A stretch of 64,000 nucleotides of DNA from Pocillopora damicornis (Eukaryota): the NCBI RefSeq assembly GCF_003704095.1, contig NW_020847569.1, positions 434,001 through 498,000 on the forward strand, given 5' to 3'. The translations under genes were made by a program, and so were the position numbers. Below the pieces are notes generated by a model. The model did no database searches, was not told the DNA's origin, and saw nothing but the letters and a program-made list of their open reading frames with translations. Each line of letters starts with the position of its first letter. Within the stretch, counting starts at the first letter, position 1. Positions 15,430 to 17,975 of this stretch are shown here, one piece after another.

Positions 15430-17180
15430 AATTAGGAAGAAAAGCGAGAGATGTTTTATGAAATGCAAGCTGAGATAAGAACACTTCAAAATGATGTAGA
15501 AAAAGCTAAGACCACAAATAAAGAATTAATTCATTACACTGAACACCTGCAGAGAGCTCCGCAAGACTACAAGGGAAAGGACATTTCTCAAGTAAAGAAA
15601 AAGTCAAGGACTTTGAGGACTGTCATGACAAGAGCTCAGACAGCACTGTTTGTTTGCTAAGTCCTTTGGAAAAGAAGTTGAGTCTATTGCCATGAAAGAA
15701 GTCAAGACTGGAAGCAAACACAATGTAAAAATGGCCAGTGATGAGCAACAAGAAAACACTGCCACAGGGCTCAACTCCCTTTCAAAACAGGAAAAGGAAA
15801 AAGTAGATCACATTTTATTTCTTTTAGACATATTTTGTGTAGGAGACTCATCTTATCATGAGCTCTCTATGTTTAATGATCTTCCAAAATCATATCTGAT
15901 CAAGCAACGGCAAACACAGCTAAATGATGTGTCATATTATATCCACACCTGGAAGAGCCAAGGGTGTGGAAGTTTCATTCCAGGAATTTCTCAAGGAAAG
16001 AGTGCAAGATTTATTAACCAAAATCCAGAATTTGATATTGAAAATGAAAGTGTAAAGGTTAAAATATCAGGGGATGGGGCAAGGATGACTTGCAATACAA
16101 GCTTTATCATTCTTTTCCTCTGTTGCTCTAAATTCAATGAACAAAATGGACAAAAATTAATGGGAAAGAAATAACATTTGAATTCTTTTGGGGGGGAGAA
16201 TACAAATTCATTTTAATCATGTTAAGACTTTAAGGTATCACCTCATTCTATGCTTGTGCCTGGTGCAAAGTTCAAAGATAAAAGATGGGATATGAACCAC
16301 AAGGAAGATTATTACAATAAGCCACCATTACATAGAACCCTAGAAGAATTAAAGGGATTCTCAAAAAAGGAACTAAGACAATTTTTGCTGTGAACAGGTG
16401 CCTCTAATAAATATTGAGTTTGACCATGTAATTTTAGATGAAATGCACCTTTTACTTAAATCTAAACTTAAATTGTATCTCAATATTTAATTGTATAGAT
16501 CTTGATTTTTATTTTATTTTTATTTACTTATTTATTTTATTTTAAGGTAGTTTTTACATAGGGTTAACCTCCAAACTTCCTTTTCTAAAAGTACCTTTTT
16601 TCCCTTAGTTTTTAATCTGTATATATAGTTTGCTTCTAGAATATATAAATTATGTATGTATGTATTACTAAACAATTTATGGGAGGATGTACTACAATGG
16701 GAAAAAAGAGATTGATTTCCACTCTTTTACATCTTCTTGCAGGGAAGAGTTCAACTCCTTTAGTTGTTTATTTTCCCTCTCCAGTTCTGCCACTGATTGA
16801 ACATGCCTCTCAAACACATGGAACATTTTTATTTTTGAGTTCAGGGCAAGGCCCTTTCGCCCCCTGATCTGCTTGTATTGAGACTTCACAGAAGTAGCTT
16901 ATTTTCACAGGGATTCATTCAACTCTTTTCTCACTTCTTTGGATTTTTTGATAGAAAACAAGTTGCCACAGATAATAAGTTCAAACAAGTCAGTGCAAGT
17001 TTTACATTTTTTCCTCCTACGTTTCTGAAATGCTTCCAACATGACCGGACCTTGTGTCAGTTCATCATCCACATGTTCTTCCTCCTCTACCCCTTCATTT
17101 TCTGGTTTATTAAGGAAGTCATTCAAAACTTTAAGCATAGGGTAAGGTAAGTCAAAGGTAAATGCTACATTTTCTGCCAT
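15430..17180. pseudogene. Degenerate Transib/RAG1-core-like DDE transposase, copy 2 (N-terminus on -, remainder inverted onto +)
   Basis: Minus 17180-16700: AFTFDLPYPML...KMFHV...VKEWK. Plus 15430-16460: ILFLLDIFCVGDSSYHE, KVKISGDGARMT, EFFWGGEYKF, YACAWCKV, IEFDHVILDEMHLLL. Confidence 0.72.
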
Positions 17181-17298
17181 TGACTGTGATGTAGTTGGGA
17201 GGTGGTGTGTCAGACATTGTAAACACGCCAGGTGAGCTGTCTCGAAAAAGTCTGCATTTGGCTACTGTGGTCAAATCAGCGGACTTTCCCAAAACAAA

Positions 17299-17975
17299 AT
17301 GGTGGCTAGAAGAGAACGCTTCTCTCACGAACAAATTATTGAACAAGTTTCTGTGGAAAGTGTGGAAATCGAGGAAGATGAAGGCTTAGAGGTTAGTTTC
17401 GCAGATGTGTTGGAGAGGTCGATAAGTGAATTTAACATTTTACGACCTTCCATTTCGAATTTTTCGGATTTTAAGGAGGCAGCCCATCAGTTGCCAAAGA
17501 ATGTCTACCCACGGCACGAAGATGGAGTCCATGGTATGGATAAGGCTCTAAAGTCTTCCATCCCAGCTTGGACCATGATCACATCAGAAGTTCTGATGTG
17601 GCTAAATAGGATAAGAAGGCAAATGTCCACAAACCTAAGGGCTTCAAATCCCTGGACCATAGAGGTAAAGGGTGACCTCCCTCAAGAGATGTTTGAAATT
17701 ATATGAAGTCTGTGCAAGGGGCACCTTCAACATTTGGAGTATTAGTGGAGGAAAATATGATAAAATACACTCATAGAAATTGTCTCCATGATTTTTCAAA
17801 GTTTTCTGGCCTCCCTAGGAGTGAAGTTGCAGGGAAGCTCAACAAAACATTTGGGGGGAACCGTAAAGGCTTTAAGGCAGAGGTGCTTGTGAGCAGGGAG
17901 AAGCATCTTGTACTAGCCTATAATCACAAGCAAAAGCAGGTAACTCTTGCTTGCAATAATTATTATGGCTGTTGA
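17299..17975 (+). pseudogene. Unknown ~225-aa ORF split by a frameshift (ATGA overlap at 17703-17706), head-to-head with transposase copy 2
   Basis: Two abutting ORFs of 135 and 90 aa; starts 119 bp from the transposase ATG on the opposite strand. Confidence 0.45.

What the first reader, a model, noticed from the sequence alone, without database searches (positions are those of the whole stretch)
15430..17975. RAG1/Transib-like transposase with a head-to-head partner gene: a possible two-gene element family
Seen: motifs in RAG1-core order. KVKISGDGA matches RAG1 KESCDG (D600), GGEYKF matches GYDEK (D708), YACAWC matches YICTLC, and DEMHLLL matches DALHCDI. Copy 1 adds FTGQGVEKNND, matching SEGNESGN (E962). 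An unknown ~225-aa ORF starts 119 bp away on the opposite strand. In copy 1, a short degenerate stretch at the equivalent divergent position (about 6590-6685) resembles it: gaggacgaaggggctagaaattacggttt vs gaggaagatgaaggcttagaggttagtttc (EDEGLEITF vs EDEGLEVSF). Established: RAG-like transposons pair RAG1L with a convergent Kelch-type RAG2L, and Transibs are single-gene. Inference: this family may carry a different, divergently transcribed accessory gene, a long coiled-coil N-terminus and a C-terminal SAP-like domain.
Basis: partly seen in the sequence, partly recalled or inferred. Interest (0 to 1): 0.75.

Follow-up and report, generated by a model that had tools for sequence, protein, structure and literature searches.

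The report
Dead RAG1-fold transposon copies, wrong partner

Summary
The motifs are real. They lie in three reading frames of a decayed and rearranged transposase copy. Intact relatives exist, for example an 812-aa coral protein. They keep D393, D474, E743 and a CxxC...HxxxxH zinc set. Their predicted core superposes on RAG1 at Z 28.1, on amphioxus RAG1L at 24.8 and on HzTransib at 22.2; the next fold, P element, scores 14.5. By sequence the family sits between Pfam RAG1 and DUF1280, the Chapaev family. So "RAG1/Transib-like" holds at fold level.

The divergent "partner" (17299-17975) is one frameshifted gene of an unrelated coral family, PF26709. It lies next to no other transposase copy: none of 7 other own-genome contigs and 0 of 80 metagenome loci. 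The claimed echo in copy 1 is chance.

The family is nevertheless a two-gene element. A convergent, usually spliced chromodomain gene follows the transposase in 20 of 23 loci with enough downstream DNA. Its last 46 codons survive at window 4031-4171, beside an assembly gap. Termini read CATGGCCAGAAAT, not CAC; the target duplication is unresolved. This scan found the same family twice before elsewhere in this genome.

The parts
15424..16458 (+). Copy 2, core fragment of the transposase (about aa 182-579 of the 812-901-aa relatives). It is frameshifted, and the second catalytic D reads E.
   Evidence: tblastn with P0001, P0024 and P0034; six-frame view; motif positions; DNA matches to C1082 at 87% and C2232 at 85%.
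16710..17201 (-). Copy 2, N-terminal fragment (about aa 22-185). It is on the opposite strand to its own core, and homology to other copies ends at about 17189-17201.
   Evidence: Independent DNA contigs bridge 16620-16767 and 16865-18100.
16456..16665 (.). Unrelated ~210-bp dispersed repeat between the two halves of copy 2.
   Evidence: 88-95% matches on C1420, C3203, C2995 and C1067, among others.
17299..17975 (+). It is not part of the transposon.
   Evidence: Piece A aa 48-135 aligns to family positions 17-104, and piece B aa 1-89 to positions 105-208. 87 of 90 homologues carry PF26709. One contig from an RNA library has an extra T after 17703 that joins the frames.
5498..6496 (-). Copy 1, N-terminal third of the transposase (aa 1-252), interrupted by a foreign 235-bp repeat at 5665-5900.
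6497..6850 (-). Copy 1, part of the element's long 5' untranslated region, cut off at 6850. Other copies run on about 340 bp further to the terminus GCATGGCCAG...
   Evidence: Alignment A2; pairwise ends.
4997..5497 (+). Copy 1, a 500-bp segment (aa 263-435, including KIKINGDGA) that is inverted in place.
   Evidence: The copies on C279, C2813 and C1536 are collinear where the window is inverted.
4511..5000 (-). Copy 1: aa 437-457, then a deletion of about aa 458-755, then the C-terminal part aa 756-901 with FTGQGVEKNND and the SAP-like tail.
4031..4171 (+). Last 46 codons plus the stop of the family's real second gene (the C-domain of the chromodomain protein). It is convergent with the copy-1 transposase, and the rest is lost in or beyond the N run at 3930-4029.
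   Evidence: tblastn with 12 ORF2 queries: L062 aa 99-142, 61% identity, E 3.4e-14; translation.

Best explanation
The window carries two dead, rearranged copies of an anthozoan cut-and-paste DNA transposon. Intact elements measured here are 5.2 kb (L061) and 6.8 kb (L111, L113-L115); a decayed own-genome copy spans 4.8 kb. They have short inverted termini, 5'-CATGGCCAGAAAT..., and two convergent genes.

Gene 1 is an 800-900-aa transposase. It has an alpha/beta plus long-helix N-terminal region, then a core at about aa 297-785 with the RAG1/Transib architecture. The core carries an RNase H-like DDE centre (D393, D474, E743) and a split zinc site (C493, C496, H718, H723). Some members have a SAP-like tail.

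Gene 2 is a small, usually spliced gene. It encodes a chromodomain followed by a conserved ~130-aa domain that matches no known family.

Inferred mechanism, not shown: the transposase excises and inserts the element by the nick-and-hairpin chemistry of RAG and Transib. The chromodomain protein reads methyl-lysine on histone H3 and steers or licenses the transposase on chromatin. This would resemble the chromodomains of chromoviral integrases or the PHD finger of RAG2.

In this window nothing is functional. Copy 2 lacks its 5' end, its C-terminal third and gene 2, and is internally inverted. Copy 1 has an inversion, a large deletion and a foreign insert, and keeps only the last 46 codons of gene 2. 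The ORF at 17299-17975 is a neighbouring frameshifted gene of an unrelated coral family. It was brought next to the truncated transposase fragment by rearrangement.
For: Intact relatives: a 653-aa open frame on C478 and a 577-aa frame on C2232. P0001 is 100% identical and 812 aa long.

Conserved residues come from 38 full-length proteins. A profile search of PDB sequences puts RAG1 (E 3.3e-4) and amphioxus RAG1L (8.2e-4) on top, aligning GGDYK...YAClWC with GYDEK...YICTLC and YMHxxxxH...GQGVEKNN with YLHKTLAH...SEGNESGN.

The AF2 model has pLDDT 80.3. Foldseek ranks 1-49 are all RAG1, RAGL or HzTransib, best E 7.6e-16. VIA gives Z 28.1, rmsd 3.6 A over 444 residues, model 300-785 against RAG1 459-1008.

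Partner test: the PF26709-family ORF lies on C139, C317, C4242, C155, C4124, C2006 and C1177, and none of these contigs has a transposase hit. It is in 0 of 80 metagenome loci. No other genomic DNA copy covers 17190-18200.

Gene 2: it is present and convergent in 20 of 23 loci with at least 1300 bp downstream. Chromo PF00385 scores E 6.7e-16, 1.9e-13 and 6.9e-9. The chromodomain exon lies upstream of the C-domain in 25 loci. The ORF2 model has pLDDT 92.7, and its residues 1-54 match H3K9me3/K27me3-binding chromodomains.

Termini: the motif is inverted at both ends of L061, L111, L113-L115, C2813 and C998. It occurs 19 times in the genome, against 0 for the reversed control.
Against: No copy in the window is intact, so everything about function rests on relatives. 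Pfam RAG1 (PF12940) is never reached above its cut-off: 3 of 38 members hit, best E 7.6e-4. Identity to RAG1 or Transib in structural alignments is only 12-17%.

The termini do not start with CAC, and no 5-bp target duplication was seen. Three of 23 loci with enough downstream DNA lack gene 2 (L085, L110, L135). Two loci (L087, L091) have it in another arrangement.

No interaction between the two proteins, no histone binding and no transposition has been shown. Metagenome contigs of a multi-copy element can be chimeric: L111 and L113 share a left flank but not a right flank.
Confidence: 0.85

Rival explanations
1. The family is simply a Chapaev transposon (Pfam DUF1280; CMC superfamily of Yuan and Wessler; a clade of the Transib superfamily for Kapitonov and Koonin). 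Calling it RAG1/Transib-like then adds nothing new.
For: DUF1280 scores 26.3 bits on the C2232 copy against a cut-off of 25. It scores 30.6 bits on a sea-cucumber relative, P0331, and hits 5 of 38 members, best E 4.3e-5. Majorek 2014 equates DUF1280 with Chapaev transposases and groups it with RAG1 (PMC3985635, passages read). Kapitonov and Koonin 2015 list Chapaev and Chapaev3 as clades of the Transib superfamily (PMC4411706, passages read).
Against: The Chapa zinc finger, with or without a RING finger, is described as characteristic of Chapaev and Chapaev3. The canonical Chapaev copy in this genome shows what look to me like a RING-type and a further Cys-rich motif (C1307:750971; read by eye, not tested). 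Both are absent here: there are no invariant Cys or His before residue 300 and no zinc-finger Pfam hit. Published Chapaev3 elements are 1.8-1.9 kb, single-ORF, start with CAC and have a TWA duplication (PMC3014272). This family is 5-7 kb, has two genes and starts with CATGG. hhalign against the canonical coral Chapaev is no better (E 0.0048 and 0.02) than against the coral RAG1L (2.2e-4 and 0.002). I could not see Repbase.
Confidence: 0.35
2. One reading: the divergent ORF at 17299-17975 is a true accessory gene of the element.
For: The ORF is head-to-head with the transposase fragment, 119 bp from its ATG. The juxtaposition is real in independent DNA runs, and one contig from an RNA library spans 16560-17766. 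The ORF is intact in that run.
Against: No other contig carrying the ORF family has a transposase hit, and 0 of 80 metagenome loci carry it. Transposon homology ends at about 17189-17201, well short of the 5' UTR and terminus, which lie about 650-690 bp upstream of the ATG in complete copies. The ORF family is single-copy here at DNA level. The copy-1 'echo' is chance.
Confidence: 0.03
3. The chromodomain gene is a passenger: a host gene captured once by one lineage and carried along without a role in transposition.
For: Three of 23 loci lack it. No interaction has been shown. DNA transposons are known to pick up host fragments (general knowledge).
Against: The gene is kept in the same position and orientation across subfamilies. 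ORF2 proteins are only 24-49% identical to the reference row L104, and full-length transposases only 39-83% identical to P0001. Open frames survive in many copies. That pattern points to selection within the element.
Confidence: 0.15

Closest known systems
RAG1 / RAG1L (RAGL transposons such as amphioxus ProtoRAG)
   Same: The core architecture matches from the dimerisation/DNA-binding domain to the C-terminal domain (Z 24.8-28.1). DDE and CxxC/HxxxxH residues are in the same order. A second gene lies convergent with the transposase.
   Different: Identity is only 12-17% and Pfam RAG1 is not reached. No nonamer-binding-domain region is aligned: the model range starts at about 297, matching RAG1 459. 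There is no RING or N-terminal zinc domain. The second gene encodes a chromodomain protein of about 180-200 aa, not a Kelch-propeller RAG2L. Termini are CATGG..., not a CAC heptamer.
Transib (e.g. Helicoverpa zea Transib)
   Same: Same fold (Z 22.2 over 413 residues). It is a cut-and-paste DDE element.
   Different: This family has a 300-aa N-terminal extension, two genes and other termini. No PDB-sequence profile hit to HzTransib was listed at E <= 10.
Chapaev / Chapaev3 (Pfam DUF1280)
   Same: DUF1280 hits are borderline but above the cut-off. It is distantly RAG1-related and abundant in cnidarians, according to passages read.
   Different: There is no Chapa or RING domain. The elements are much longer, the termini differ, and a chromodomain gene is present.
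Chromoviruses (Ty3/Gypsy elements whose integrase ends in a chromodomain)
   Same: A mobile element carries its own chromodomain. In chromoviruses this is reported to direct integration to heterochromatin (Gao et al. 2008, seen only as a reference entry, otherwise recalled).
   Different: Here the chromodomain is on a separate protein of a DNA transposon, not fused to a retroviral-type integrase.

Membership tests
RAG1/Transib fold class | Core architecture (DDBD, pre-RNase H, RNase H, ZnC2/ZnH2, CTD) superposable on solved RAG1, RAGL and Transib structures | tested here: met
   Foldseek ranks 1-49 are all RAG1, RAGL or HzTransib, best E 7.6e-16. VIA Z is 28.1, 24.8 and 22.2, and the next fold, P element, scores 14.5. 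The model is of the relative P0001, not of a window copy.
RAG1/Transib fold class | DDE triad plus CxxC...HxxxxH zinc ligands in RAG1 order | tested here: met
   D393, D474, C493, C496, H718, H723 and E743 are invariant in 38 of 38 proteins. D474, the Cys pair, the His pair and E743 are aligned to the RAG1 motifs. In window copy 2 the second D reads E.
Pfam RAG1 (PF12940) | Score above the gathering cut-off (25 bits) | tested here: not met
   3 of 38 members hit, best E 7.6e-4, below the cut-off. The best related protein scores 19.6 bits. The six-frame genome scan finds only C3529, a different and canonical RAG1L fragment.
Transib / RAGL transposons | Termini beginning 5'-CAC (heptamer-like) | tested here: not met
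   Termini read CATGGCCAGAAAT at both ends of L061, L111, L113-L115, C2813 and C998.
Transib / RAGL transposons | 5-bp target-site duplication | tested here: inconclusive
   The one complete own-genome copy, C2813, is flanked by CCG/CCG (or CC/CC). Metagenome copies show no matching flanks and may be chimeric.
RAGL transposons | Convergent Kelch-type RAG2L gene | tested here: not met
   The convergent gene encodes a chromodomain plus an unknown domain of about 130 aa.
Chapaev (Pfam DUF1280, PF06918) | Score above the gathering cut-off (25 bits) | tested here: inconclusive
   The C2232 copy scores 25.6-26.3 bits and P0331 scores 30.6 bits. Only 5 of 38 full-length members hit at E <= 1.
Chapaev / Chapaev3 | N-terminal Chapa zinc finger (with or without a RING finger) | tested here: not met
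   There are no invariant Cys or His before residue 300 and no zinc-finger family in Pfam scans. The canonical Chapaev copy L057 in the same genome shows Cys-rich N-terminal motifs that look RING-like by eye.
Chromodomain (PF00385), for gene 2 | Score above the cut-off (25.1 bits) and the chromodomain fold | tested here: met
   Scores are 58.4, 50.5 and 35.9 bits. Foldseek hits CDYL2, CBX and HP1 chromodomains at 30-40% identity. VIA Z is up to 6.9 over 52 residues.
   87 of 90 homologues of the paralogue L015 carry PF26709 as a precomputed label. The two window pieces align collinearly to positions 17-104 and 105-208. The local Pfam copy lacks this model (no hit), so the family name is unknown to me.

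The most novel reading that the evidence does not exclude
A widespread animal lineage of RAG1-fold transposases works with its own histone-mark reader. Pairing a RAG1-type nuclease with a chromatin-reading partner would then be older and more general than the RAG1-RAG2 pair itself.
Probability: 0.25. Interest if true: 0.8.

Novelty: new variant of a known kind. Interest (0 to 1): 0.6.

Why it matters
RAG1-RAG2 is the textbook case of a transposase tamed together with a chromatin-reading partner. Here a distant RAG1-fold transposase carries a different reader, a chromodomain instead of a Kelch/PHD protein, in the same convergent layout. That would give a second, independent system in which to ask why such nucleases need a chromatin cofactor, and how target choice or licensing evolved.

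The family is large. A profile search found 9301 representative clusters at E <= 0.001 and 4342 at E <= 1e-10. It has relatives in a scallop and a sea cucumber. The named database records I saw call them uncharacterised or hypothetical proteins.

For this window itself the result is sobering. Both copies are wrecks, and the proposed divergent partner is a bystander gene.

Tried and rejected
Pfam on the window's own ORF pieces gave only coiled-coil noise. phmmer of the 653-aa protein against PDB sequences gave nothing relevant.

hhalign of the family profile against single coral RAG1L and Chapaev fragments gave correct motif alignments but low probabilities. It could not rank the two.

My first estimate of the 3' end of the copy-1 subfamily (...GTGAACTCACCGT) was wrong. 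The true terminus lies further out (L054:5790).

The five own-genome ends that share the flank ACAGTGTTCG looked briefly like a CACAGTG heptamer. They turned out to be copies of a composite repeat carrying only 136 bp of the element.

The target-site duplication could not be settled.

The ORF2 C-domain gave no clear fold match, best Z 4.0.

The ESM Atlas search for the PF26709 protein gave no usable hit. The word-index search with ORF2 found 7 unnamed proteins.

Literature searches and passages read showed no RAG1-like, Transib or Chapaev element with a chromodomain partner. This covers only the held library. Supplementary tables, such as the Transib and RAG1L lists of PMC9435367, and Repbase could not be seen and may contain this family.
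Full report
WHAT IS IN THE WINDOW

The genome is a stony coral. It has 234 Mb in 4393 contigs, and the window is C4204:434001-498000. The best protein match is 100% identical to an uncharacterised Pocillopora verrucosa protein.

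KVKISGDGA is at 16055, GGEYKF at 16192, YACAWC at 16249 and DEMHLLL at 16437. These four lie in three different frames of the + strand. FTGQGVEKNND is at 4933-4901 on the - strand.

tblastn with three full-length relatives maps both copies.
- Copy 2 has aa 22-174 (P0001) or 24-185 (P0034) on the - strand (17201->16710) and aa 182-579 on the + strand (15424->16448). Nothing lies beyond aa 579.
- Copy 1 has aa 1-252 on the - strand (6496->5498) and aa 263-435 on the + strand (about 5000-5490). Then aa 437-457 and aa 756-901 are again on the - strand (5000->4511).

DNA comparison with other copies shows that C279, C2813 and C1536 are collinear where window 4997-5497 is inverted. It also shows that 5665-5900 is a foreign repeat. 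For copy 2, C2232 and C1082 are collinear where the window has its core inverted relative to its N-terminus. Unrelated dispersed repeats abut the breakpoints at 15175-15430 and 16456-16665. Both copies are therefore decayed and rearranged fragments.

THE TRANSPOSASE

Open copies exist in the same genome on short contigs: C478 with 653 codons and C2232 with 577. Full-length proteins of 748-910 aa occur in many anthozoans, including Pocillopora, Stylophora, Nematostella, Exaiptasia, Dendronephthya, Paramuricea and Desmophyllum. Every name a source gave was "uncharacterized", "hypothetical", "predicted" or "unnamed".

In an alignment of 38 of these proteins, D393, D474, C493, C496, H718, H723 and E743 are invariant. 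A profile of that alignment against all PDB sequences puts zebrafish RAG1 (E 3.3e-4), amphioxus RAG1L (8.2e-4) and mouse RAG1 on top. Two collinear stretches pair GGDYK...YAClWC with GYDEK...YICTLC, and YMHxxxxH...GQGVEKNN with YLHKTLAH...SEGNESGN.

An AlphaFold2 model of P0001 has mean pLDDT 80.3, above 90 through most of the core. In Foldseek, ranks 1-49 are RAG1, BbRAGL or HzTransib, with E from 7.6e-16 to 2.2e-7.

VIA-align results:

| Target | Z | rmsd / aligned residues |
|---|---|---|
| Mouse RAG1 459-1008 (model 300-785) | 28.1 | 3.6 A / 444 |
| BbRAGL | 24.8 | 4.1 A / 451 |
| HzTransib | 22.2 | 4.2 A / 413 |
| P element transposase | 14.5 | 5.2 A / 336 |
| ISCth4 | 9.8 | 5.7 A / 265 |
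| Hermes | 9.4 | 5.8 A / 287 |

A language-model look-alike search also lists RAG1 clusters among the nearest named ones. This is a lead only.

WHERE IT SITS AMONG KNOWN FAMILIES

By sequence the family is far from both RAG1 and Transib, at 12-17% identity in structural alignments. Pfam RAG1 hits only 3 of 38 members, all below the cut-off. In the whole genome it finds only a different, canonical RAG1L fragment on C3529.

Pfam DUF1280 just passes its cut-off on the C2232 copy, at 25.6-26.3 bits. It also passes on a sea-cucumber relative at 30.6 bits, and it hits 5 of 38 members. Majorek et al. 2014 equate DUF1280 with Chapaev transposases and group it with RAG1 (PMC3985635, passages). Kapitonov and Koonin 2015 count Chapaev and Chapaev3 as distant clades of the Transib superfamily (PMC4411706, passages). 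A 2026 preprint files Chapaev under CMC.

The family nevertheless lacks the Chapa/RING zinc module described for Chapaevs. The canonical Chapaev copy in this genome shows Cys-rich motifs of that kind, by eye only (L057). In this family there is no conserved Cys or His before residue 300.

Published Chapaev3 elements are 1.8-1.9 kb, have a single ORF, start with CAC and have TWA duplications (PMC3014272, passages). Profile comparisons with the coral RAG1L and the coral Chapaev fragments are about equally weak. My reading is a distinct lineage within the RAG1-Transib-Chapaev assemblage.

The lineage is large. A profile search found 9301 representative clusters at E <= 0.001, 4342 at 1e-10 and 897 at 1e-30. 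It reaches a scallop and a sea cucumber.

THE PROPOSED DIVERGENT PARTNER

The '225-aa ORF' is two ORFs in different frames. They align collinearly with positions 17-104 and 105-208 of ~185-213-aa coral proteins. Of 90 such proteins, 87 carry the precomputed label PF26709. So this is one gene with a 1-base frameshift at 17703.

Paralogues lie on C139, C317, C4242, C155, C4124, C2006 and C1177. None of these contigs appears among the 70 and 60 transposase matches. Those lists are lower bounds, because only part of the candidates were scored.

None of 80 transposase-bearing metagenome loci has a PF26709-family match. No other DNA copy in the genome covers 17190-18200, and transposon homology stops at about 17189-17201. 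Complete elements have about 650-690 bp of 5' UTR plus terminus upstream of the start codon.

The alleged remnant in copy 1 needs a frame change to read EDEGLEITF and is no better than shuffled sequence. It lies inside the element's own 5' UTR.

THE FAMILY'S REAL SECOND GENE

Complete elements have 1.5-2.5 kb between the transposase stop and the 3' terminus. There, on the opposite strand, lies a conserved ORF.

Of 23 metagenome loci with the transposase C-terminus and at least 1300 bp downstream, 20 have this ORF. All 20 are convergent, with 256-786 bp between the end of the transposase match and the ORF2 match. L085, L110 and L135 lack it. Over all 80 loci, 30 have it: 28 are convergent and downstream (gaps 164-786 bp), and two (L087, L091) have another arrangement.

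It is also present beside own-genome copies on C3321, C1082, C2141, C3586, C2813 and C1536.

Longer open frames show a chromodomain directly upstream: PF00385 at 58.4, 50.5 and 35.9 bits. In 25 loci a chromodomain exon precedes the C-domain exon on the same strand. The gap is 13-788 bp, and the two parts are contiguous in L073, L104 and L122.

The model of L104 ORF2 (183 aa) has pLDDT 92.7. Residues 1-54 match CDYL2, CBX, HP1 and Chp1 chromodomains bound to H3K9me3 or H3K27me3. The remaining ~130 residues have no Pfam or PDB-sequence match and no clear fold match, best Z 4.0. That last part is barely tested.

In the window, 4031-4171 (+) reads ...IRLFLAKSPKTYYIVNGQIQEDQRMLIEKLSIDFSRQPVTIQS*. 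This is the end of the gene (61% identity to L062 over 44 residues, E 3.4e-14). It is convergent with the copy-1 transposase and is cut off by the N run at 3930-4029, which I left untouched.

TERMINI

The same motif, CATGGCCAGAAAT, stands inverted at both ends of these copies:
- L061, positions 148-5383, 5236 bp
- L111, L113, L114 and L115, 6.8 kb each
- the C2813 copy, 4.8 kb
- a 1-kb derivative on C998

A 22-base version occurs 19 times in the genome, against 0 for the reversed control. Flanks differ right up to the motif. This is not the CAC heptamer type.

The only complete own-genome copy is flanked by CCG/CCG. Metagenome copies show no matching flanks and are probably chimeric, because L111 and L113 share one flank only. 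The duplication length stays open. No terminus lies near either window copy.

READS

Independent DNA runs hold the copy-2 locus at 95-100% identity. They bridge 15300-15723, 16620-16767 and 16865-18100, so the juxtaposition with the PF26709 gene is real. The repeat at 16494-16544 is not bridged by a listed DNA contig.

The two DNA runs agree with the window at 17703. One contig from a polyA RNA library, spanning 16560-17766, has an extra T there. By my reading of the codons this joins the two frames. Contigs cannot show strand or prove transcription.

MECHANISM (INFERRED)

By fold and conserved residues, the transposase should cut and join DNA with a DDE centre, as RAG and Transib do. The long helical N-terminal region may serve dimerisation, and the SAP-like tail of some members may bind DNA.

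The chromodomain protein, with its chromodomain fold and 30-40% identity to methyl-lysine-binding chromodomains, most likely binds methylated H3. Through its C-domain it most likely binds the transposase, targeting or licensing transposition. None of this is shown.

EARLIER NOTES OF THIS SCAN

After I had found gene 2, the search of earlier findings showed two earlier follow-ups on other pieces of this genome. They reached the same reading: a RAG1-shaped transposase with a tail-to-tail chromodomain gene. They agree with my result. I did not rely on them.

LIMITS

- All functional inference rests on relatives.
- Repbase and supplementary tables were not available.
- No phylogeny with reference Transib or Chapaev sequences was possible.
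- The target duplication is unresolved.

Noticed in passing
window 4997-5497 and 15424-16458; also C1307:522725-524024 (L010/L142): Both window copies carry an internal inversion with sharp breakpoints. Another copy on C1307 is a perfect palindrome whose flanks are reverse complements of each other. Two metagenome loci (L087, L091) also have gene 2 flipped. Fold-back rearrangements seem frequent in this family. Whether this reflects hairpin chemistry or assembly error is open.
   Followed up: partly
window 17703 and 17783: One contig of RNA-library run X17 has an extra T after 17703, which joins the two frames of the PF26709-family gene. Two DNA runs, X2 and X3, agree with the window at that position but carry a 3-base insertion after 17783.
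   Followed up: partly
window 15968 (run X17, loose end): A contig joins the element's terminal motif (...ATTTCTGGCCATG) directly to internal position 15968. This is an internally deleted derivative present in an RNA library of a related sample.
   Followed up: no
window 2291-3721 and 6867-7154: Long ORFs that look like the integrase and the RT/RNase H linker of a BEL/Pao- or Gypsy-type retrotransposon. This is by eye, not tested. Copy 1 of the transposon is cut off against the second one at 6850.
   Followed up: no
window 7933-9172: A run of ORFs that resembles a decayed piggyBac-type transposase. This is by eye and recall, not tested.
   Followed up: no
window 5665-5900; 15175-15430; 16456-16665: Three short dispersed repeats (about 190-250 bp) with many copies in the genome. 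One copy is 99% identical, at C4204:432066-432301. They sit at or inside the breakpoints of the transposon copies.
   Followed up: partly
G000:C4204:429625-431645, just upstream of the window: Further fragments of the same transposase family on both strands (aa 347-764), with open stretches of 271-311 codons.
   Followed up: no
G000:C1307:750971-751342 (L057) and G000:C3529 (L056): The same genome also holds a canonical Chapaev-type copy with what look like RING-type and further Cys-rich N-terminal motifs (by eye). It also holds a canonical RAG1L fragment that passes Pfam RAG1.
   Followed up: partly
G000:C1307:169841, C2862:245278, C1433:184151, C1986:750834, C2862:332145: Five copies of a composite repeat. 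The first 136 bp of the element's 5' end sit behind an identical flank of at least 120 bp, as if a solo end had been amplified inside another repeat.
   Followed up: partly
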